IMG/VR virus record: IMGVR_UViG_3300045972_000138
Span: 124,001 to 188,000 of that record
DNA length: 64,000 bases
Strand: one strand, 5' to 3'
Shown: positions 37,327 to 59,527 of the stretch, in pieces
Layout of the letters: each line of letters opens with the position of its first letter
Numbering within the stretch: the stretch's first letter is position 1
Made by a program: the position numbers and the translations under genes
The notes under the pieces: model-generated
Databases searched by the model: none
What the model was told of the DNA's origin: nothing
The model's input: the letters and a program-made list of their open reading frames with translations, nothing else

Positions 37327-37329
37327 TTG

Positions 37330-37377
37330 TTGACTGCCCCTAAGGCCCGTGTTACAATAATATGTAACGCGGGCTTT
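37330..37377 (+). promoter_or_regulatory. Sigma70 promoter inside a 12-bp hairpin
   Basis: TTGACT-N17-TACAAT; GCCCGTGTTACA/TGTAACGCGGGC. Confidence 0.7.
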
Positions 37378-37395
37378 ATTCTATTTAAGGTATAT

Positions 37396-38589
37396 ATGGA
37401 AATCAATAATGTAAAAATGTGGGTAGGTGATATGGAAGTTGAAGAAGCTGCTATTCAGCAGATTATGAATATTTCCCAATTGCCTATTCTTGCCGGACAT
37501 ATGGCTATTATGCCAGACGTTCATATGGGCAAGGGTGCAACAGTTGGTTCTGTTATTCCTACACGTTCCGCTATTATTCCTGCCGCAGTAGGTGTGGATA
37601 TTGGTTGCGGTATGATTGCTGCAATGACAAACCTTAAGGCAGAAGATCTTCCAACATCATTGTTCTCCTTGCGTAATGCAATTGAACGTGATGTACCTGT
37701 AGGCTTCAACGAGCACGACAAGGGTATCCCTTCTGTGTCGGGTCCTTATGCAGATATCCTGCGTAAGAATCTACGCAAGACAATGGATGACTTCGATACA
37801 CTAACATTGAAGAAGAATTTGGGTCGTGCTGACGAAAAGAAGATTGCACGCCAGATTGGTACGCTAGGTGGCGGTAACCACTTTATCGAAATTTGTCTTG
37901 ATACACAAAATCGTGTGTGGATTATGCTGCACTCTGGATCACGTGGCATCGGTAACCAAATTGGTACAGTTGCAATTGAACTGGCAAAGGAACAGGCTGC
38001 AAAGCGTGCATGGGGTCTCCCAGATCAGGATCTTGCTTGGTTGGATGAAGGCACACCGGAATTCGAAGCCTACATTGAAGCTATGCATTGGGCGCAGGAT
38101 TATGCACGTTTCAATCGCGACACAATGATGAACTTGGTTGTGGCAGCAATGCTGCGTAAGTTTCCTACAATGAAGATTTTGGGCGAAGTGGTAAACTGCC
38201 ATCACAACTTTACAAGCCTGGAAGAACACTTTGGTACAAAGATGTGGATTACTCGTAAGGGTGCTGTATCTGCTAAACAAGGGCAAATGGGTATTATTCC
38301 TGGTTCGATGGGTGCTAAGTCGTTTATTGTGCAAGGCAAGGGTAATCACGATTCGTACTGCTCTTGCTCACACGGCGCAGGCCGCAAAATGAGCCGTAAT
38401 CAGGCGAAAAAACTGTTCGACGTTGCAGCTATGGAAGCGCAGACGCAAGGCATCGAGTGCCGCAAGGACTCGGGTGTTATTGACGAGATTCCTGCAGCAT
38501 ACAAAGACATCGATCAAGTTATGGCAGCACAATCTGAATTGGTTGATGTAGTGCATACGCTGAAGCAGGTGCTCTGCGTTAAAGGTTAA
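37396..38589 (+). CDS. rtcB: RtcB 3'-phosphate/5'-OH RNA ligase
   Basis: MPDVH.G.G..VG, GVDIGCG, GTLGGGNHFIE, LHSGSRG, HHN, RKGA, PGSMG, HGAGR and E.P.AYK motifs; ATG 37396. Confidence 0.95.
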   Translation: MEINNVKMWVGDMEVEEAAIQQIMNISQLPILAGHMAIMPDVHMGKGATVGSVIPTRSAIIPAAVGVDIGCGMIAAMTNLKAEDLPTSLFSLRNAIERDVPVGFNEHDKGIPSVSGPYADILRKNLRKTMDDFDTLTLKKNLGRADEKKIARQIGTLGGGNHFIEICLDTQNRVWIMLHSGSRGIGNQIGTVAIELAKEQAAKRAWGLPDQDLAWLDEGTPEFEAYIEAMHWAQDYARFNRDTMMNLVVAAMLRKFPTMKILGEVVNCHHNFTSLEEHFGTKMWITRKGAVSAKQGQMGIIPGSMGAKSFIVQGKGNHDSYCSCSHGAGRKMSRNQAKKLFDVAAMEAQTQGIECRKDSGVIDEIPAAYKDIDQVMAAQSELVDVVHTLKQVLCVKG

Positions 38590-39044: not shown

Positions 39045-40244
39045 ATGGCCATTGATACATCGCCCGAAGCAGTGCTAGAACAACTAACTCGCGCACGAAT
39101 TTCTTTGTTGTTGCAACAACCTTTCTGGGGCACACTTGCAACACGTCTTATTTTGAAAGACGCCACTGAAGAAGATTGGTGCCCAACAGCGGCAACAAAC
39201 GGCAGATACTTTTACTACAATCGTAATTTTATCTCCAAACTCAACAAGCAAGAATGCATCTTCCTTGTAGCGCACGAAGTTGAACACTGTGTTTACGATC
39301 ACATGGATCGTCGTGGTGGTCGTGCAGCAAAACGCTGGAATGCAGCAGCAGACTACGTTATCAATTATGAACTGCATGAATACAACATTGGTAAGATTCC
39401 AGATCCAAAGACATCTGGTGTACAGGCCTGCTTTGATCCAAAGTACAAAGGAATGTTTGCTGAAGAAGTATACGAACAACTTACAGACGATCAAAAGTTT
39501 CCAGAGTTCGATGTTCACCTGGAGCCAGGTGATGGCAAGGGTGATCCGATGTCGGAAGACGAACAGCGCGAATTGAGCGATGAAATCCGTAATGCCGTTA
39601 TGCAGGCAGCAAAGAGCGCAGGTGCTGGCAAGGTTCCTGCAGGTGTGCGTCGTATGCTCAAGGATCTTACCGAACCACAAATGGATTGGCGTGAAATCTT
39701 GAATATGAAGATTCAATCTATGGTTAAGAGCGACTTTACCTGGGATCGTTGCTCGCGTAAGATGCAGAGCACTGGTATCTATTTGCCATCAACAAAGAAT
39801 GACTTCAAGGCTCGTGCAGCAGTAGCAATCGATGCATCCGGATCTATGGGCGATAATATGTTGCGTGATTTGCTTGGCGAAACCAAAGGCATCATGGAAC
39901 AGTTCAACGATTTTGAACTTGATGTGTGGACATTTGATACAAAGGTATACAACCCTGTACGTTTCACACCCGACAATATTGATGAAATCGATACATACGA
40001 TATTAAGGGCGGCGGTGGTACTGACTTTGATGTCAACTTTGCTTACATGAAGGAAGCTGGGTTGGAACCAGAACGCTTTATTATGATGACAGACGGATAC
40101 CCTTGCGGTAGCTGGGGCGACGAATTTTACTGCGATACATTGTTCCTTATCCACGGTGACCCACATCACAAGTTAGTTGCACCGTTTGGTATGACAGCAT
40201 GGTACGAACCAGATAGTCATTCACCGCAAAACAAGAAGAAATAA
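39045..40244 (+). CDS. Metallopeptidase + vWA domain protein (DUF2201-type), likely MoxR partner
   Basis: TAATNG, HEVEH zinc motif, MIDAS DASGS, GGGGTDF and MTDGY motifs. Confidence 0.88.
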   Translation: MAIDTSPEAVLEQLTRARISLLLQQPFWGTLATRLILKDATEEDWCPTAATNGRYFYYNRNFISKLNKQECIFLVAHEVEHCVYDHMDRRGGRAAKRWNAAADYVINYELHEYNIGKIPDPKTSGVQACFDPKYKGMFAEEVYEQLTDDQKFPEFDVHLEPGDGKGDPMSEDEQRELSDEIRNAVMQAAKSAGAGKVPAGVRRMLKDLTEPQMDWREILNMKIQSMVKSDFTWDRCSRKMQSTGIYLPSTKNDFKARAAVAIDASGSMGDNMLRDLLGETKGIMEQFNDFELDVWTFDTKVYNPVRFTPDNIDEIDTYDIKGGGGTDFDVNFAYMKEAGLEPERFIMMTDGYPCGSWGDEFYCDTLFLIHGDPHHKLVAPFGMTAWYEPDSHSPQNKKK

Positions 40245-51665: not shown

Positions 51666-51866
51666 GTGAACGACTTAGTTACGCTGAAAAACATTCTAGC
51701 CGTTTTAATTGAAAACGGCGTACACAACGAAGTAACACAGCTCGATAATGCTGTGCTCTTCGAGGGTGTTCCGCAGAATGTAATATACAAGGATGATTTG
51801 GTTGCAGCAGGTGCAACTTATGATTCAAACTTCGAAGCCTGGATGTTTTGGGGCAACGAAGAGTAA
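51666..51866 (+). CDS. Hypothetical protein
   Basis: GTG start, GAG SD. Confidence 0.5.
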   Translation: MNDLVTLKNILAVLIENGVHNEVTQLDNAVLFEGVPQNVIYKDDLVAAGATYDSNFEAWMFWGNEE

Positions 51867-51910
51867 AGCACGCAACTCTGATAAATAACATTATTGGAGT
51901 CGAATGCTTT

Positions 51911-52468
51911 ATGATATGTGAACATTGTTTAAAAGAATATACAAATAAATCCGGATATTCTAACCACATCAGGCGCTGCCCATCTAACCCGAATCGGGTA
52001 ATGGAGACAATGTCCCCCGAAGGTCGACTTAAAATAAGTAAGTCATCAACCGATTACAATAAGATAAAGTGGGCAGATCCTGTTATACGAGCAAAACACA
52101 AGCAGTCAATGAAAGATGCCGTAAAGAATAATCCAGATTCTTACACATCATCTAATCGTGGAAGAACTAAACAAATAATTGTTGATGGTATTAAATTACA
52201 AGGGCAATGGGAAGTAGATTTTTATAATTGGGCAAAAGAAAAAGGATTGAGCCCAGAAAGACCAACTATAGCATTTAAGTATGAGTGGAATGGTGAAAGA
52301 TTTTATCATCCAGATTTTTATATACCATCACTAGATTTATACGTAGAAGTGAAGGGTTATGAAACAGATAGGGATAGAGCAAAATGGTCGCAATTTCCGG
52401 GTAAGTTGCGTATAATAAAAGCTGCAGAGATAAAACAGATTAGGCAAGGGTGCTTTGAGCGAGTTTAG
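51911..52468 (+). CDS. PD-(D/E)xK endonuclease with N-terminal zinc finger (homing-type)
   Basis: CEHC...H...C zinc finger; WE, Y.PDFY and YVEVKG motifs; last codons overlap the tRNA. Confidence 0.75.
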   Translation: MICEHCLKEYTNKSGYSNHIRRCPSNPNRVMETMSPEGRLKISKSSTDYNKIKWADPVIRAKHKQSMKDAVKNNPDSYTSSNRGRTKQIIVDGIKLQGQWEVDFYNWAKEKGLSPERPTIAFKYEWNGERFYHPDFYIPSLDLYVEVKGYETDRDRAKWSQFPGKLRIIKAAEIKQIRQGCFERV

Positions 52469-52533
52469 CATAAAGGTAGTGCCGAGAACTCATAATTCTT
52501 AAGGTCCGGGTTCGATCCCCGGGGCTCGCACCA
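52459..52533 (+). tRNA. tRNA with CAU anticodon (elongator Met, or Ile2 if lysidine-modified)
   Basis: Acceptor GCGAGTT/GGCTCGC, loop CT-CAT-AA, T-loop TTCGATC, CCA. Confidence 0.9.
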
Positions 52534-52565
52534 AAGCATCTTTCCCTAATCTTAGAAAGACACAC

Positions 52566-54468: not shown

Positions 54469-54771
54469 AACTTACAACATATCAAAAACACCTATTCTCC
54501 AGATTCAAACTTCGCGGTGACTATGTCACTTGGTGTTTTAATTCTAAAGGGTGGTTGCGTATTCATCGATTCATTATCCGCTGGCGTCTAGTTGACATCA
54601 ACGCCGTAAGCTGTGCTATAATACACTCAGCAGTGTGAGTGCAGTCCTATATAGTAGGCATACAAATAAGTCCTACTATATTTTATGCAGATAATGCTTG
54701 CTAGAGTCATAAATAAGTGCTACAATAAGCACTTAGCAAAACAAATAGTTGATCGCAACTGTTTGTGGTAA

Positions 54772-54788: not shown

Positions 54789-54875
54789 GCGAGTGTGGCG
54801 AAATAGGTAGACGCAACAGACTTAAAATCTGTCGGGGGCAACTTCATGCCGGTTCGATTCCGGCCACTCGCACCA
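54789..54875 (+). tRNA. tRNA-Leu(UAA)
   Basis: GCGAGTG/CACTCGC acceptor, CT-TAA-AA loop, long variable arm, T-loop, CCA. Confidence 0.95.
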
Positions 54876-54883
54876 TAGTTTAT

Positions 54884-54965
54884 GTCCCTGTCGGTGGAGA
54901 GCGACACCTCCGCGCTTAACGGCAATGCAGAAATGCAAAGGATACGAAAGTATCAAGGGACTCCA
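54884..54965 (+). ncRNA. tRNA-sized, CCA-ending structured RNA with probable pseudoknot
   Basis: GTCCCT/AGGGAC closing stem plus T-CCA; GTCG/CGAC hairpin; two GAAA-tetraloop hairpins. Confidence 0.55.
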
Positions 54966-54972
54966 ATTTTAA

Positions 54973-55026
54973 GGGATACTTACAGCAATTTTAATTCACC
55001 GTAAATGAAACCAAAAAGGTATCCTG
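54973..55026 (+). ncRNA. Mini-RNA carrying an isolated anticodon-like stem-loop (GUA)
   Basis: GGATAC/GTATCC outer stem, TTACAGCAA linker, TTCA-ccGTAaa-TGAA inner hairpin. Confidence 0.45.
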
Positions 55027-55030
55027 TTTA

Positions 55031-55105
55031 GCCCTTGTAGCAGAGTGGTAATGCACGCGCCTTGTAAGCGCGGGATCTGGTGTTCGATTCACCACGAGGG
55101 CACCA
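55031..55105 (+). tRNA. tRNA-Thr(UGU)
   Basis: GCCCTTG/CGAGGGC acceptor, CGCGC-ctTGTaa-GCGCG, T-loop, CCA. Confidence 0.93.
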
Positions 55106-55195
55106 TATTAGAATGCACTAACTGAGTACAAGGCTCAGCGTGCGAATTCAGTAACTAAGCCTCAAGAGGAAGCTATAGTGCATTCTAATATGGTG
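55101..55195. repeat. ACCATAT...ATATGGT hairpin 1 (20-bp perfect inverted repeat)
   Basis: CACCATATTAGAATGCACTA (55101-20) / TAGTGCATTCTAATATGGTG (55176-95). Confidence 0.95.
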
Positions 55196-55302
55196 TGTTG
55201 ATCGTTAAATCAAAAAGTAAAGCGAAGTACAAGCTAGCCAATAGACCCGCGAACGTACTTAGAATCGTTCATGACAGTGAAAGCCTGTAAGGGGAGATTA
55301 AC

Positions 55303-55371
55303 ATACCATATTAGAACACACTACGACTCTAACGAGGGCTGGTTCACCGGTAGTGTGTTCTAATATGGTAT
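55303..55371. repeat. ACCATAT...ATATGGT hairpin 2 (22-bp perfect inverted repeat)
   Basis: ATACCATATTAGAACACACTAC / GTAGTGTGTTCTAATATGGTAT. Confidence 0.95.
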
Positions 55372-55444
55372 ACCGATAGCCCAAAGATAAGAGGCAAGTA
55401 TAATTACTGACAGTGCAGGTTAGATTCCTGTTCGGATACTACCA
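55367..55444 (+). pseudogene. Degenerate tRNA-like unit
   Basis: GGTAT(A)CCGA/TCGGATACT-ACCA stem, GCC/GGC D-like arm, CAGG-TTAGATT-CCTG T-like arm; no canonical anticodon arm. Confidence 0.55.
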
Positions 55445-55585
55445 TATTAAACTACATTCGTTGATCGGTGAGCCCAGGGCAGATCCGCAAATGTCGAAGT
55501 GTTGTTACACACAGTTTCGGTCCTTGCCATATAGTGCTTGGTATCGGGTAAGACGGTTTAATTCCGCAGTGTAGTTTAATATGGT
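55441..55585. repeat. ACCATAT...ATATGGT hairpin 3 (18 bp, one G-U)
   Basis: ACCATATTAAACTACATT / AGTGTAGTTTAATATGGT. Confidence 0.92.
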
Positions 55586-55702
55586 GATGTAATGTCCTCG
55601 CAAGGGACTGTGGCAGAGCAACGCGGATCGTTATACGGCAATGCTCAAGAGAATGCAACCACATGGGGCAAGAGTAAGTGAACGTGAGTAACCGATTACC
55701 TC

Positions 55703-55829
55703 TACCATATCAATCCGCAAAGCTCTTGCGACGGGGCTTTACAGGACGGGAATTGACCCGAAACGTGTCGCAGCGTTGGCATCTGGTAAGGATGCATAGC
55801 CTGAATTAACAGGGCGGATTGATATGGTG
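55703..55829. repeat. ACCATAT...ATATGGT hairpin 4 (16 bp)
   Basis: TACCATATCAATCCGC / GCGGATTGATATGGTG. Confidence 0.92.
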
Positions 55830-56240
55830 TGCTAAGTTAAGTGCCTTAAACTGAAAGAGAATGAAAAGTAGAATTGCAGCTAATGTAGCCTGGCCAGGTA
55901 CGGCATTAGACGTTCTAGTTAGTAGATTTCTGGAGGGGTAGTTTAGTGTAATAGGAGCACGCAACCTTTATGGCGCCGAAGAACGGTGCGATACCGTGGC
56001 TATTAAAGGTGCTTAACTTAGATTTCCGAAGCTTGTAATCAAGCCTGACACGACAGCATAACGTGGGTTGGACCTTAGCCAAGTAAAAATATTAAGGTGC
56101 AGTATTGCCATGCATAGAAGTGTGATAGTTTACGGGGCGGAGTTCTTAAAACTACCCTGGTATGGTCCTAATCATTAGGCCAAAGAAAGTGTTGTTAACG
56201 ACACCAAAGTCATCCTAGACTGGAAAAACTAGGGTGCATA
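55826..56240 (+). ncRNA. About 415-nt multi-domain structured RNA candidate
   Basis: 16-bp long-range stem 55832-47/56006-21 enclosing a tRNA-like module; several short hairpins downstream; no ORF. Confidence 0.55.
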
Positions 56241-56254
56241 TATTTTAAAGATTT

Positions 56255-56443
56255 GCCTCAGTACCTCAGTGGATTTGTGATTGTACTACTTTAAAGGAAC
56301 GTTTAGTAGGGATTGCACTTTAAAGACGAATGCTTCTTCTTGCACAGATGCGCGATCTGGAATGGTTTTAGTTGAAGTCAATACTGTAGAGGGCCGGATT
56401 TCTAATCCGAAAGTCGGGGGTTCGATTCCTTCCTGCGGCACCA
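56255..56443 (+). tRNA. tRNA-Arg(UCU) interrupted by a ~112-nt insertion in the D-loop
   Basis: 5' part GCCTCAG-TA-CCTC-AGTGGAT (56255-74); 3' part (T)A-GAGG-G-CCGGA-TT TCT AA-TCCGA-AAGTC-GGGGG-TTCGATT-CCTTC-CTGCGGC-A-CCA (56387-443). Confidence 0.75.
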
Positions 56444-56513
56444 TATAGAAACACATTTCCGACAGTAGGCGGAGGTGACAATGTCCATTCGGGTGAATGT
56501 GTTTCTATATGGT
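56440..56513. repeat. ACCATAT...ATATGGT hairpin 5 (19 bp)
   Basis: ACCATATAGAAACACATTT / GAATGTGTTTCTATATGGT. Confidence 0.92.
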
Positions 56514-56620
56514 ATGAAGCGTACTGTAACACTTAGTGGGAAAGCGCCTTCTGTTGTATATGATTTAGCAACTCACCTCTGGTAAATCACGACAGGAGAA
56601 AGTTACAGCCATTTTTATTA

Positions 56621-56800
56621 TGGTAAATGCGGAGACTGATCCGCGAGTTAGGTTGCGTCACCGGGTGGCTTATTTTGCCAAGATCACATCAGATTGAGGC
56701 TACACTCCTACCGCGGAAATTGGGTGATGTCCGAGGGTCTGAAGCGTAAGATGAGTAGTAGGAAAATCTAAATAATGCAGGAGATCAGTACCTGTTACCA
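56621..56800 (+). ncRNA. Closed structured unit TGGTAA...TTACCA
   Basis: Nested stems ACTGATC/GATCAGT, AGATT/AATCT and TCCTAC/GTAGGA; CCATTTTTAT direct repeat at 56609 and 56798. Confidence 0.55.
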
Positions 56801-56804
56801 TTTT

Positions 56805-56943
56805 TATAGAAAGCTTCCTGAGTAGCTACACTGGAACAACTGAAATACTAATGCCAGCCCCGAAAAAAGTGGGAAAGTTTCTTAGGACCAGCCAGGAAGA
56901 GTAGGGCTACCACGAATTCGAGCGTCACAGGAAGCTTTCTATA
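56805..56943. repeat. Terminal 16-bp inverted repeat of the array
   Basis: TATAGAAAGCTTCCTG / CAGGAAGCTTTCTATA enclosing a GTAGC/GCTAC branched interior. Confidence 0.9.
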
Positions 56944-56955
56944 GATAAATACTGT

Positions 56956-57171
56956 ATGGCCACAATCAAGCGAAAATCTAAAATGACAGATGATGATTTC
57001 AGACGCGATTTCGAAGACAGTGTCATTATGGAAGAACTTGATTTTGATACCATACCAATGGAACTATTAGCAGAATTTGAAGCAATGTCTATACAGTCAA
57101 AAGGTATAGACCAGGATGTACAAGAACATATAGAAACTGAATTTGATCAATTACGTGACACCTATCTATAA
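56956..57171 (+). CDS. Small acidic late protein, leaderless
   Basis: ATAAATA (56945-51) 4 nt before ATG. Confidence 0.65.
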   Translation: MATIKRKSKMTDDDFRRDFEDSVIMEELDFDTIPMELLAEFEAMSIQSKGIDQDVQEHIETEFDQLRDTYL

Positions 57172-57421: not shown

Positions 57422-57928
57422 ATGGACATTGTATACAAAGCGCGGGTATTTGCTACTGCTGCACACTACGCGGTTAAACAGGTGCGGAAGTACACTGGTG
57501 AACCTTACATCGTGCATCCAGCAGAAGTAGTTAACATTCTGTACAAATATGGTGCAACAGACGAAATGGCTGCTGCAGGATGGTTACACGACACAGTGGA
57601 AGACACTGGTGTCACAATCGATGTCATTTACTACGAATTTGGGCAAACCATCGGCGAATATGTGAATTGGTTGACTGACCAAACCAAGCCCGAAGATGGT
57701 AACCGTGCCGTACGAAAGAAGATGGATGCTGATCGTTTAGCACTGGCACCAGCCGAAGTGCAGACTGTAAAGTATGCTGACCTGATCTCCAATACCAGGT
57801 CCATTACTGAATATGATGCAGGTTTCGCTAAAACATATTTGGTTGAAAAGGCTTACCTGTTAAGCGTAATGACAAAGGGTAATCCGCACCTTTACGAACT
57901 TGCGATGAAGAATATTGTATCAGTCTAA
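57422..57928 (+). CDS. HD-domain (p)ppGpp hydrolase-like protein (small alarmone hydrolase, SpoT-HD/Mesh1 family)
   Basis: AH..Q.RK..GEPYI.HP..V, A.WLHDTVEDT and VK.AD..SN motifs. Confidence 0.88.
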   Translation: MDIVYKARVFATAAHYAVKQVRKYTGEPYIVHPAEVVNILYKYGATDEMAAAGWLHDTVEDTGVTIDVIYYEFGQTIGEYVNWLTDQTKPEDGNRAVRKKMDADRLALAPAEVQTVKYADLISNTRSITEYDAGFAKTYLVEKAYLLSVMTKGNPHLYELAMKNIVSV

Positions 57929-58108: not shown

Positions 58109-59527
58109 ATGACATACCAACTTATTAAAGAAATCGCATCTGATAACTCCAAGCTTCACAAGGAAGCAGTTATCAAGCGCGAAGCACTTGCAAACAATAG
58201 CGATTTCTTTGCAGGCCTGCGCTATGCACTGGACAATATCGACACCTTCGGTGTTAAGAAGGTTCCAGAACGCAGTGGGCCCGACGGCCCTGGGTTGCCG
58301 TTTATTGGATTTGCTGCATTAGCGAACCAACTCATTGAACGCAATATTACTGGCGGCGCTGCATTGGATGCAATTGAAAAAGGTATGCGTCTTGCAACCA
58401 ACGATGAGTGGAATGGCTGGTATCGTCTCATTCTGATTAAAGATTTGAAGGCAGGCTTCTCCGAGAGTACTGTTAACAAGGCAATCAAAGATACCCACCC
58501 GCAATGGGTAATTCCAACTACGCCGTATATGCGCTGCACATTGCCAGCCAAGTCCAACATGGAAGACTGGGATTGGAGCAAAGGTATTTACAGCCAAACC
58601 AAGGCCGATGGTATGTTTGCTAATGTGAACATCCGTCAAGATGGTTACTTGTGGGTTACTAGCCGTGGTGGTACATTGTTTCCACCCGGTAGCCTGGGCA
58701 TCGAAGATCAGCTTGTCGCAGTGTTCGATAAGGGCACACAGACGCACGGCGAACTTACTGTCTATATCGATGGTGTGTTGCAAGCTCGCGAAATCGGCAA
58801 TGGTATCTTCAACAGTCTGCTTAAAGGCGGATCGTTGGAAGCAAACCAGAAGGTGCATTACGATTGCTGGGATCAGATTCCAATTGCCAAAGCACTACCT
58901 AAGGGCAAGTACGAGATTGGATACGAAAAGCGGTTTACTGTTTTAAAGATTCAGGTTGATACTGCAAAGAAAGATTCAGTAACTGCACACTTGGATCCAA
59001 TTGAGCTTACCGAAACGCGCATTGTGTTCTCTATGTCTGAAGCTGTAGTGCATTACAAGGAACACCGTGCTCGCAAGTTGGAAGGCACAATCCTTAAGGC
59101 ACCTACTACAATTTGGAAGGATGGCACATCCAAAGACCAAGTTAAGATGAAGGAAGAGATTGACGTTGAGTTGAAGGTAATTGGCTTCAATCCTGGCAAG
59201 GGCAAGAATGCAAACACATTTGGTTCTATCCAGTGTGCAAGCGAATGCGACTTGCTGGAAGTAAATGTGTCTGGTATGAGCGATGATATGCGTGCTGCTA
59301 TCCACGCAGACCGTCTGAACTGGCCCGGTAAGATTATTACTGGTCGTTCCAACTCGCTGCTGGCTCCAAGCAAAGGTAAGAAGAATGGTAAGTGGTCTCT
59401 GTTCCTCCCGCGCTTGATTGAAGAGCGTATGGACAAGACTGTTGCCGATACATTGGAACAGATCCAAGCTCAGTTTGCTGCTGCTGAAGCTGCTGTTAAA
59501 TCTACCGAAGAGGATAGCGAAGAATGA
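58109..59527 (+). CDS. ATP-dependent DNA ligase (T4 gp30-like)
   Basis: Adenylation motif QTKADG, HGEL, EG.ILK, W..G.S....K.K and SLFLP motifs; leaderless after TTGACT-N16-TATAAT. Confidence 0.9.
   Translation: MTYQLIKEIASDNSKLHKEAVIKREALANNSDFFAGLRYALDNIDTFGVKKVPERSGPDGPGLPFIGFAALANQLIERNITGGAALDAIEKGMRLATNDEWNGWYRLILIKDLKAGFSESTVNKAIKDTHPQWVIPTTPYMRCTLPAKSNMEDWDWSKGIYSQTKADGMFANVNIRQDGYLWVTSRGGTLFPPGSLGIEDQLVAVFDKGTQTHGELTVYIDGVLQAREIGNGIFNSLLKGGSLEANQKVHYDCWDQIPIAKALPKGKYEIGYEKRFTVLKIQVDTAKKDSVTAHLDPIELTETRIVFSMSEAVVHYKEHRARKLEGTILKAPTTIWKDGTSKDQVKMKEEIDVELKVIGFNPGKGKNANTFGSIQCASECDLLEVNVSGMSDDMRAAIHADRLNWPGKIITGRSNSLLAPSKGKKNGKWSLFLPRLIEERMDKTVADTLEQIQAQFAAAEAAVKSTEEDSEE

What the first reader, a model, noticed from the sequence alone, without database searches (positions are those of the whole stretch)
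55101..56943. Array of alternating ACCATAT...ATATGGT long hairpins and closed RNA cassettes: candidate undescribed RNA cassette/processing system
Seen: five 16-22-bp near-perfect inverted repeats, all opening with ACCATAT and closing with ATATGGT (55101-195, 55303-371, 55441-585, 55703-829, 56440-513), plus a related 16-bp one (56805-943). The outer 7 bp are invariant, while the inner arms differ between copies yet stay complementary, which indicates selection on structure. Each left arm begins inside the 3' ACCA of the preceding tRNA or unit, and each right arm ends in the GGT that starts the next unit. The intervening units (55192-308, 55367-444, 55583-707, 55826-~56240, 56511-611, 56622-800) mostly fold back on themselves GGT...(A/G)CCA, so neighbouring stems compete for the same junction bases. 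This is not CRISPR: the repeats alternate in orientation and vary internally. Inference A: RNase III-type processing stems, like those flanking rRNAs, release a polycistron of diverse small RNAs (decoys or sponges). Inference B: attC-like single-strand recombination sites allow RNA-gene cassettes to be gained and shuffled at tRNA 3' ends.
Basis: partly seen in the sequence, partly recalled or inferred. Interest (0 to 1): 0.86.

Follow-up and report, generated by a model that had tools for sequence, protein, structure and literature searches.

The report
Conserved long hairpins in phage tRNA arrays
Five long, perfect RNA hairpins that start at the CCA end of a phage tRNA belong to an undescribed hairpin family found in the tRNA gene clusters of dozens of large environmental phages; each hairpin encloses a different small RNA, and they probably mark where the long tRNA transcript is cut.

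Summary
Five perfect 15-22 bp inverted repeats (ACCATAT...ATATGGT) lie at 55102-56513, downstream of tRNA-Leu and tRNA-Thr, in about 2.2 kb with no ORF longer than 72 aa. They are not peculiar to this phage. A pattern scan and a covariance model found about 170 sites in 53 loci, nearly all inside tRNA arrays of large phage contigs, some of which also carry T4-type genes or GOLLD RNA.

The arm consensus is (A)CCAUAUUGAAGCACAUU / AGUGUGYUUCAAUAUGGU. Stems are about 20 bp, and the interiors (25-150 nt) are unrelated to one another. Pairing holds in 98% of cells, with compensatory changes at 11 of 12 variable pairs. G.U pairs favour the tRNA strand, so this is an RNA structure. Where a tRNA lies directly upstream, its CCA pairs with the hairpin's 3' UGG.

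Whole hairpins recur in unrelated flanks, so they behave as modules. Rfam 15 and the literature search have no match.

My best reading is that they are co-transcribed, stem-closed RNA modules that act as dsRNA-nuclease (RNase III-type) processing sites and release tRNAs plus stem-capped small RNAs. That step is unproven. The attC-like reading fails its defining features. The sixth hairpin (56805-56943) is not a member.

The parts
54698..54726 (+). Promoter-like site (TTGCTA-17-TACAAT with TG) upstream of the RNA array
   Evidence: This is a consensus match only.
54789..54875 (+). tRNA-Leu(UAA), first gene of the array
   Evidence: 62.7 bits.
54970..55028 (+). Second conserved spacer RNA motif (GGAUAC...UUACAGCAAUUUU...GUAUCC)
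   Evidence: Homologs lie between tRNAs in L050, L085 and L067, with a compensatory GGAUCC/GGAUCC change. Weak Dicty_Class_I_RNA hits recur at this element.
55031..55105 (+). tRNA-Thr(UGU); its ACCA forms the first 4 nt of hairpin 1
   Evidence: 65.4 bits.
55102..55194 (+). Hairpin 1: 19-21 bp stem, 55-nt interior with three small hairpins
   Evidence: z -7.5; 55.9 bits.
55195..55304 (+). Unit 1: non-tRNA RNA closed by a 12-bp stem (55192-55203 with 55297-55308)
   Evidence: z -2.7. No homolog among the fetched loci.
55305..55369 (+). Hairpin 2: 20-22 bp stem, 25-nt interior
   Evidence: z -7.7; 53.3 bits.
55370..55440 (+). Unit 2: about 75 nt with a T-arm-like hairpin (GCAGGUUAGAUUCCUGU); not called as a tRNA
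   Evidence: Absent from the tRNA hits.
55441..55585 (+). Hairpin 3: 18-19 bp stem including a U.G pair, 109-nt interior
   Evidence: z -3.2. One search gives 46.2 bits although this hairpin was not in the model's training set.
55586..55703 (+). Unit 3: 118 nt, with no significant fold of its own
   Evidence: z +1.0.
55704..55828 (+). Hairpin 4: 15-16 bp stem with the most divergent arms; 95-nt interior forming four hairpins
   Evidence: z -6.1; 35.4 bits.
55829..56370 (+). Unit 4: about 540 nt of non-coding sequence, including a 16-19 bp inverted repeat (55832-55850 with 56003-56021)
   Evidence: (z -0.7). No Rfam hit except a 16.7-bit tRNA-like match at 55937-56005.
56371..56443 (+). Decayed tRNA-Thr-like element whose ACCA opens hairpin 5
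   Evidence: 26.5 bits against a 29-bit threshold. (84% identity to the 3' half of the L018 tRNA-Thr).
56440..56513 (+). Hairpin 5: 18-19 bp stem, closest to the family consensus
   Evidence: z -6.6; 54.2 bits.
56514..56802 (+).
   Evidence: z -1.4 for the first. Only a 40-aa ORF lies here.
56803..56945 (+). Terminal 18-bp hairpin just before the ORF at 56956; not a demonstrable family member
   Evidence: z -3.7; 7.3 bits, E=7.4.

Best explanation
The five hairpins are RNA-level modules transcribed together with the phage tRNAs. Each is a perfect duplex of about 20 bp, with a conserved arm sequence, that closes off a different small structured RNA.

The 5' arm begins at the CCA of the tRNA, or tRNA-like unit, in front of it. 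In the precursor, that 3' end is therefore held in a helix with the UGG at the 3' end of the hairpin.

I infer that a double-strand-specific endonuclease of the RNase III class, from the host or the phage, cuts the duplex. I further infer that the AU-rich outer half (CCAUAUUGAA/UUCAAUAUGG) then melts, freeing the upstream 3' trailer for trimming back to CCA and the downstream leader for RNase P. The inner half would stay as a cap on the released small RNA.

Shown here: the structure, the strand, the conservation, the link to CCA and the modular behaviour. Inferred: the cleavage, the enzyme and any function of the enclosed RNAs.
For: Structure and conservation:
- The structure is real and conserved. 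Across 48 distinct hairpins from about 30 loci, 98.1% of cells pair against 87.6% in shuffles (0 of 500 shuffles reach it). Of the 12 variable pairs, 11 show compensatory changes, and register slides drop pairing to 30-49%.
- Stem length is tightly set, with a mode of 20 bp; 55 of 70 stems are 18-21 bp.

RNA level, on the tRNA strand:
- U17.G is the commonest pair at one position (31 of 48).
- In a strand-neutral count, G.U outnumbers A.C 204 to 82, and 77 sites against 18 favour the tRNA sense.
- The family model scores the + strand higher than the - strand for all five window copies.

Position:
- Members lie in tRNA arrays.
- At 17 non-redundant tRNA-to-hairpin junctions, CCA pairs with UGG in 16 and N73 pairs in 14.
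- Fifteen of 70 hairpins have a tRNA starting within 8 nt downstream.

Supporting context:
- The same window encloses tRNA-Met in a 20-bp leader/trailer duplex.
- All five stems form in the global fold of the array.
Against: - No transcript ends or cleavage data exist for these contigs.
- RNase III does not need a conserved sequence. Yet the arms are conserved across distant phages and homogenised within each genome, which points to a sequence-specific partner or to gene conversion.
- A pure processing signal would not need interiors of 25-150 nt. Some interiors are conserved between phages, so the cargo probably matters in its own right.
- No RNase III or dsRNA-binding gene turned up among 60 window ORFs or 128 ORF families next to arrays. 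Host RNase III would suffice, however.
- 49 of 70 hairpins have no recognised tRNA directly upstream.
Confidence: 0.42

Rival explanations
1. These are stem-clamped small-RNA genes, and the interiors are the functional products (tRNA mimics, decoys or aptamer-like RNAs). The standard 20-bp stem then serves only as a scaffold. It protects against exonucleases and insulates folding from neighbouring tRNAs. The ends are made by the ordinary tRNA machinery (RNase P and 3' trimming), not by a cut within the stem.
For: - Interiors are structured and differ from one another.
- Several interiors are conserved between different phages while their flanks are not.
- About 10% of hairpins have a T-arm immediately before the 3' arm. 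One of these interiors scores as a tRNA (L085, 31.4 bits).
- T4's tRNA cluster is known to hold two extra stable RNAs of unknown function (my own knowledge).
Against: - Some interiors are very short (25 nt in hairpin 2).
- The model does not explain why the stem must include the upstream CCA, nor why stem length is fixed near 20 bp.
- A stem that starts exactly at the CCA would block 3' exonucleolytic trimming of the upstream tRNA unless something cuts it.
Confidence: 0.25
2. The hairpins are DNA-level recombination or mobility modules. On this view the inverted arms are sites for a recombinase, transposase or homing enzyme, or simply shared microhomology. They would let RNA-gene cassettes be duplicated and exchanged between co-infecting phages, in the manner of attC sites, REPINs or the T4-type PeSL shuffling cassettes.
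For: - Whole hairpins recur in unrelated flanks, with homology ending at the hairpin ends: L085 4647-4723 and 5338-5418; L050 1518-1591 and 3017-3094; L006 1656-1727 and L014 6651-6722; L012 and L067; L085 and L119 (script-oriented coordinates).
- Arms are homogenised within a genome and differ between genomes.
- HNH and GIY-YIG endonuclease genes sit inside the arrays.
Against: - G.U pairs favour one strand, the strand of the tRNAs.
- Stems are perfect, without the extrahelical bases of attC sites, and the ends do not match the attC core sites.
- No integrase or RAYT-type gene was seen in the scanned ORFs.
- In the window the family is confined to 1.4 kb and is not dispersed.
- No presence/absence polymorphism appeared among syntenic loci, though all syntenic pairs were near-identical.
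- Interiors differ between copies, unlike amplified MITEs or REPINs.
Confidence: 0.13
3. The hairpin is a mask for the CCA end. Its 3' UGGU, in cis or after release as a 3' overhang in trans, pairs with tRNA NCCA ends. This is the same pairing used by the T-box UGGN bulge and by the GGU of RNase P loop L15. It could delay aminoacylation or shield phage tRNA ends from host nucleases that attack tRNAs.
For: - CCA:UGG pairing is kept at 16 of 17 junctions, and N73 is paired in 14 of 17.
- The 3' arm ...AUAUGGU is more constant than the 5' arm; for example GCUAUAU pairs with AUAUGGU through two wobbles.
- In a scan that did not require the first two bases, 11 of 14 hairpins still began with NCCA.
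Against: - Most hairpins have no recognised tRNA in front of them.
- Four base pairs are too few to act in trans without a protein.
- The model explains neither the 20-bp stem nor the cargo.
- The ascertainment pattern itself demanded ACCATAT.
Confidence: 0.08

Closest known systems
RNase III processing stems of rRNA operons and the conserved RNase III hairpins between phage T7 early genes (my own knowledge)
   Same: They are long RNA duplexes placed between the mature products of a polycistronic transcript. The T7 sites also resemble one another in sequence within one genome. Like the rRNA stems, these hairpins enclose an RNA.
   Different: - These stems are perfect, whereas the T7 sites have internal loops.
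- They share an arm sequence across many distantly related phages.
- They start at a tRNA CCA.
- Each encloses a different small RNA.
- Cleavage has not been shown.
Stable RNAs C and D (species 1 and 2) of the phage T4 tRNA cluster (my own knowledge)
   Same: They are extra small stable RNAs of unknown function, co-transcribed with tRNAs in a T4-type phage. Some loci carrying the hairpins also have T4-type genes (RegA, SegE).
   Different: No sequence or structure match was tested or seen. The T4 RNAs are not known to be closed by a shared 20-bp stem.
GOLLD and ROOL RNAs of phage tRNA islands
   Same: They share the genomic niche. A GOLLD RNA lies in the same array as family hairpins in L037 (219.9 bits). 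These RNAs are reported 'often near tRNA islands' (bioRxiv 10.1101/2024.12.08.627333).
   Different: The hairpins are small and simple, and are defined by the stem rather than by an ornate core. No GOLLD or ROOL hit lies in the window.
Integron attC sites
   Same: Both are imperfectly conserved hairpin-forming sites with short conserved ends and variable centres, lying between cassettes.
   Different: - The ends do not match the RYYYAAC/GTTRRRY core sites.
- There are no extrahelical bases.
- No integrase was seen.
- The cassettes are RNAs, not ORFs.
- G.U pairs favour the transcribed strand.
REPINs / BIMEs (paired inverted REP sequences moved by RAYT transposases; my own knowledge)
   Same: Both consist of two inverted 18-25-nt repeats around a spacer, giving a hairpin of about 100 nt that is present in many copies.
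   Different: - REPINs are scattered through bacterial intergenic regions and have similar spacers.
- These hairpins are confined to phage tRNA arrays and have unrelated interiors.
- No RAYT gene was seen.
T-box UGGN bulge and RNase P L15 GGU pairing with the tRNA NCCA end (my own knowledge)
   Same: A UGG(U) element base-pairs with the (A)CCA 3' end of a tRNA.
   Different: Here the pairing is in cis, within the primary transcript, and continues into a 20-bp helix.

Membership tests
RNase III-type processing stem | Continuous RNA duplex of about two helical turns within a transcript | tested here: met
   Stem mode is 20 bp, with 55 of 70 stems at 18-21 bp. Pairing holds in 98.1% of cells. G.U pairs favour the tRNA strand.
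RNase III-type processing stem | Lies between mature RNAs of a polycistronic precursor | tested here: met
   Members lie in tRNA arrays. Seventeen non-redundant junctions start in the upstream CCA. Fifteen of 70 have a tRNA within 8 nt downstream.
RNase III-type processing stem | Staggered double-strand cleavage by RNase III | not testable with these tools
   No RNA end data or enzymology is available.
Integron attC site | Core sites R''/R' matching RYYYAAC ... GTTRRRY | tested here: not met
   The ends are (A)CCAUAU ... AUAUGG(U) in every member.
Integron attC site | Imperfect stem with extrahelical bases and an unpaired central spacer | tested here: not met
   Stems are gap-free and 98% paired.
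Integron attC site | Adjacent integron integrase (tyrosine recombinase) | tested here: inconclusive
   No integrase family appeared in the Pfam results shown for 60 window ORFs (one search listed 25 of 28 families) or 128 array-flanking ORF families (one search listed 25 of 71). The remaining 174 kb of the contig were not seen.
REPIN / BIME | Copies dispersed through intergenic regions of the genome | tested here: not met
   A full-sensitivity model search of the 64-kb window finds only the five copies, all within 1.4 kb.
REPIN / BIME | Spacer between the inverted repeats is similar among copies | tested here: not met
   Interiors are unrelated apart from a few duplicated modules.
CRISPR array | Direct repeats separated by unique spacers | tested here: not met
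   The repeats alternate in orientation. No CRISPR-DR Rfam hit was found.
Any Rfam 15 family (GOLLD, ROOL, HDV-like/theta, hammerhead, twister, YrlA and others) | Covariance-model score at or near the family threshold | tested here: not met
   Only tRNAs reach threshold in the window. At E up to 10, the hairpins draw only spurious miRNA-precursor hits of 17-25 bits against thresholds of 57-90. The result is the same in 16 related loci.
tRNA (RF00005) | Score of at least 29 bits for the units or hairpin interiors | tested here: not met
   In the window, 56371-56440 scores 26.5 bits, 55937-56005 scores 16.7 bits, and nothing else hits. One hairpin interior elsewhere does pass (L085:2619-2713, 31.4 bits).
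The new hairpin family itself (model R1) | Significant score against a model built from 44 hairpins of other phages plus four of the window's own | tested here: met
   Window scores are 55.9, 54.2, 53.3, 46.2 and 35.4 bits (E from 4e-13 to 2e-7). The 46.2-bit copy was not in the training set. The sixth hairpin fails at 7.3 bits.

The most novel reading that the evidence does not exclude
The hairpins are the address tags of a phage RNA-cassette system. A genome-specific 20-bp stem would be recognised by a dedicated sequence-specific dsRNA-binding or dsRNA-cutting factor that co-evolves with it. This would allow tRNA operons to carry, release and exchange a changing set of small RNAs (tRNA mimics, decoys against tRNA-targeting defences). 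The CCA:UGG pairing would couple release of these RNAs to tRNA maturation.
Probability: 0.2. Interest if true: 0.85.

Novelty: new variant of a known kind. Interest (0 to 1): 0.68.

Why it matters
Phage tRNA islands are now seen as counter-defence and translation tool-kits. They also hold large RNAs of unknown function, such as GOLLD and ROOL.

It links tRNA 3' ends to a set of diverse small RNAs.

The family gives a direct experimental handle on how long phage tRNA transcripts are punctuated. It also points to a possible reservoir of unexplored small phage RNAs. If the arms prove to have a specific protein partner, the pair could become a new orthogonal RNA-processing tool.

Tried and rejected
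- **Known RNA families.** Rfam at gathering and at permissive thresholds, on the window and on 16 related loci, found no family for the hairpins.
- **Literature.** Searches by topic and by arm sequence found nothing relevant; the sequence hits were primers only.
- **Isolate phages.** BLAST of the array matched only the tRNAs. One search was wasted: I gave coordinates from my re-oriented copy of L014, so a wrong stretch was searched.
- **Close relatives of this phage.** Flanking proteins found only the window's own contig, IMGVR_UViG_3300045972_000138. A window-specific arm pattern in the metagenomes found only two unrelated long palindromes. Cassette gain and loss in this lineage therefore could not be examined.
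- **Presence/absence test.** All syntenic pairs among the fetched loci were near-identical and kept every hairpin, so the test was uninformative.
- **Bacterial genomes.** A strict pattern found nothing. A loose pattern found the family only on short MAG contigs rich in tRNAs, and on no finished isolate genome.
- **Co-located protein partner.** No gene family is shared by most arrays. Pfam on array-flanking ORFs showed no RNase III, dsRBD, integrase or RAYT among the families listed.
- **Unit 4 as a large structured RNA.** The fold is no better than shuffles (z -0.7), and there is no GOLLD or ROOL hit.
- **Loose arm-consensus scan.** Allowing 3 mismatches in a 13-nt arm consensus was too noisy to use.
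Full report
**1. Observation.**
The window comes from a 237.6-kb IMG/VR contig, IMGVR_UViG_3300045972_000138. It encodes a family-B DNA polymerase, DNA ligase, RtcB and tail genes.

Between the ORF ending at 54638 and the ORF starting at 56956 there is no ORF longer than 72 aa. tRNA-Leu (54789-54875) and tRNA-Thr (55031-55105) open this stretch.

Each is 100% complementary over 15-22 nt.
- All ten ACCATAT/ATATGGT motifs of this stretch lie within 55102-56513.
- Each hairpin folds far better than shuffled sequence, with z from -3.2 to -7.7.
- All five stems persist in the minimum-energy fold of the whole 1.5-kb stretch.

The sixth repeat (56805-56943) is a real stem but not a demonstrable relative (7.3 bits).

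**2. The hairpins are a family, not a local oddity.**
I scanned IMG/VR for ACCATAT-N(50-80)-ATATGGT-N(70-100)-ACCATAT. About 70 of them have no tRNA and look like chance matches. The other 40-odd carry 4-27 tRNAs each.

In those tRNA-rich loci the motif extends into 12-25 bp stems. The stems share a consensus that my pattern did not ask for: ACCAUAU[U/A][G/A]AA[G/A]CACAUU paired with AGUGUG[C/U]UUC[A/U]AUAUGGU.

A structure-only search of the same loci found further copies whose outer ends differ (GCUAUAU, CAUUUUAU, UACGCAAUAU). It also found long runs of hairpins with no tRNA between them, for example about ten in L085.

I built a covariance model from 48 hairpins.
- In the window it finds exactly the five copies, including the one left out of training.
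- It gives 325 strand-hits in 53 loci. Most sites hit on both strands, so this is about 170 sites.

**3. It is an RNA structure on the tRNA strand.**
On the 48-sequence alignment, 98.1% of cells pair, against 87.6% after shuffling (0 of 500 shuffles reach the observed value). Of the 12 variable pairs, 11 show changes on both sides. Sliding the register drops pairing to 30-49%.

At pair 17 the commonest pair is U.G (31 of 48 sequences). In a count that treats both strands alike, G.U pairs outnumber A.C pairs 204 to 82 in the tRNA sense. Seventy-seven sites lean to the tRNA sense and 18 lean the other way (an earlier, slightly biased count is).

Stem length is narrowly set, with a mode of 20 bp and 55 of 70 stems at 18-21 bp.

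**4. Relation to tRNAs.**
At 17 non-redundant junctions where a tRNA lies directly upstream, the hairpin starts inside its NCCA. CCA pairs with UGG in 16 of these, and the discriminator base is paired in 14.

A scan of bacterial genome records did not require the first two bases, yet 11 of 14 family hairpins still began with NCCA.

Fifteen of 70 hairpins have a tRNA starting within 8 nt after the stem. Forty-nine of 70 have no recognised tRNA in front. What precedes those is non-tRNA or decayed tRNA-like sequence, as in the window (units 1-4).

The GGU...ACC 'closure' of the units follows automatically from the hairpin ends on either side. Only unit 1 (12 bp) and unit 2 add real pairing.

**5. 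Modular behaviour.**
Interiors are unrelated to one another, but some recur.
- The same interior appears twice in L085 and twice in L050, with different flanks.
- L006 and L014 share an identical 33-nt interior. Their flanks are unrelated and their arms differ by compensatory changes.
- L012/L067 and L085/L119 share interiors at about 80% identity.

In every case the homology ends at the hairpin ends. Arms are alike within a genome and differ between genomes, for example GUACA in L034, UUUGAGCAC in L067 and UUAGAAYRCAC in the window.

About 10% of hairpins have a T-arm directly before the 3' arm, and in at least one case a D-arm directly after the 5' arm. One interior passes the tRNA threshold.

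**6. Context.**
The arrays also hold:
- a GOLLD RNA (L037), group I introns and a permuted tmRNA;
- HNH and GIY-YIG endonuclease genes and a T4-type RegA.

Proteins of several of these loci match window proteins at 40-69% identity. No closer relative of the window phage was found.

No finished isolate bacterial genome carries the family. The only genome-record hits are short, tRNA-rich MAG contigs binned to freshwater and other taxa, which are most simply phage DNA.

In the window itself, tRNA-Met is enclosed by a 20-bp leader/trailer duplex. This shows that the phage uses long duplexes around stable RNAs elsewhere too.

**7. Mechanism.**
Shown: a conserved RNA duplex of about 20 bp, on the tRNA strand, that begins at a CCA end and closes a variable RNA.

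Inferred: the duplex is a double-strand nuclease site of the RNase III type. Cutting it would separate the upstream tRNA, the enclosed RNA and the downstream unit. The AU-rich outer half would then melt so that normal trimming and RNase P can finish the tRNA ends.

The fixed stem length, the position in the arrays and the tRNA-Met duplex support this reading. Two findings argue against it as the whole story:
- The arm sequence is conserved across phages and homogenised within genomes.
- The interiors are sizeable and sometimes conserved.

Either the cargo RNAs are products in their own right, or a sequence-specific partner exists, or both. I recall that Mini-III-class RNases can prefer an ACC-containing duplex sequence. 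That is a lead from memory, not a test.

The attC reading fails its defining features. A looser DNA-level role for the arms in shuffling modules is not excluded.

**8. Novelty.**
No Rfam 15 family and no paper in the searchable library describes this element.

In kind it is closest to RNA processing stems and to the extra stable RNAs of T4-type tRNA clusters. I therefore file it as a new variant of a known kind, with about a one-in-five chance that it is a distinct cassette system with its own recognition factor.

Noticed in passing
window 52437-52552: tRNA-Met (52459-52533) is enclosed by a 20-bp leader/trailer duplex (52437-52457 with 52532-52552). The duplex abuts the acceptor stem and includes the last bases of the CCA. 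The left arm overlaps the 3' end of ORF 51848-52468.
   Followed up: partly
window 54970-55028; L050:2730-2815; L085:353-431(-); L067:5325-5403(-): A second conserved spacer RNA of about 55 nt lies between tRNAs (GGAUAC-UUACAGCAAUUUU...-GUAUCC, with a compensatory GGAUCC/GGAUCC change in L067). It repeatedly draws sub-threshold Dicty_Class_I_RNA hits (25-35 bits) and has no Rfam family of its own.
   Followed up: partly
window 37327-38589: This ORF is an RtcB RNA ligase (E 7e-128), encoded 16 kb upstream of the array. PHROGs labels the neighbouring ORF 39045-40244 'HNH endonuclease', but by Pfam it is a DUF2201 metallopeptidase/VWA protein.
   Followed up: partly
window 56371-56443: This is a decayed tRNA-Thr. 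Its 3' half is 84% identical to a tRNA-Thr of L018, its 5' half has diverged, and it scores 26.5 bits, just under the tRNA threshold.
   Followed up: yes
window 55832-56021: A further 16-19 bp inverted repeat (55832-55850 with 56003-56021) lies immediately after hairpin 4. It encloses 152 nt that include a very weak tRNA-like match (55937-56005, 16.7 bits). Its arms are unrelated to the family.
   Followed up: no
L037:407-872(-); L003:926-1123(-); L067:5544-5735(-); L067:160-391(-): The related arrays also carry a GOLLD RNA (219.9 bits), two group I introns (56.9 and 69.3 bits) and a permuted tmRNA (82.7 bits).
   Followed up: no
window 51848-52468: This 206-aa ORF gives only a weak DUF7487 match. 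It has 59-69% identical homologs inside the tRNA arrays of L003, L069 and L077, so it may be an array-resident (homing?) gene.
   Followed up: no
L121, L123, L124, L127, L128, L133, L137/L143, L155: Short MAG contigs binned as Planktophila, Crocinitomicaceae, Aquiluna, Planctomycetia, Polynucleobacter and a gammaproteobacterium carry family hairpins together with 3-21 tRNAs. They look like phage DNA placed in bacterial bins.
   Followed up: partly
window 57422-57928 and 58109-59527: Directly downstream of the array lie an HD_4-domain phosphohydrolase (the SpoT/Mesh1-type HD family) and an ATP-dependent DNA ligase. The ligase's best match among isolate phages is about 42% identity, to Pseudomonas phage Nican01 and its relatives.
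   Followed up: no
window 54876-54950 and 55586-55660: The spacer after tRNA-Leu and unit 3 share short stretches (AUGUCC..., ACGGCAAUGC...GAAUGCAA). These were seen by eye and in repeat family D12. MAFFT did not give a convincing alignment.
   Followed up: partly
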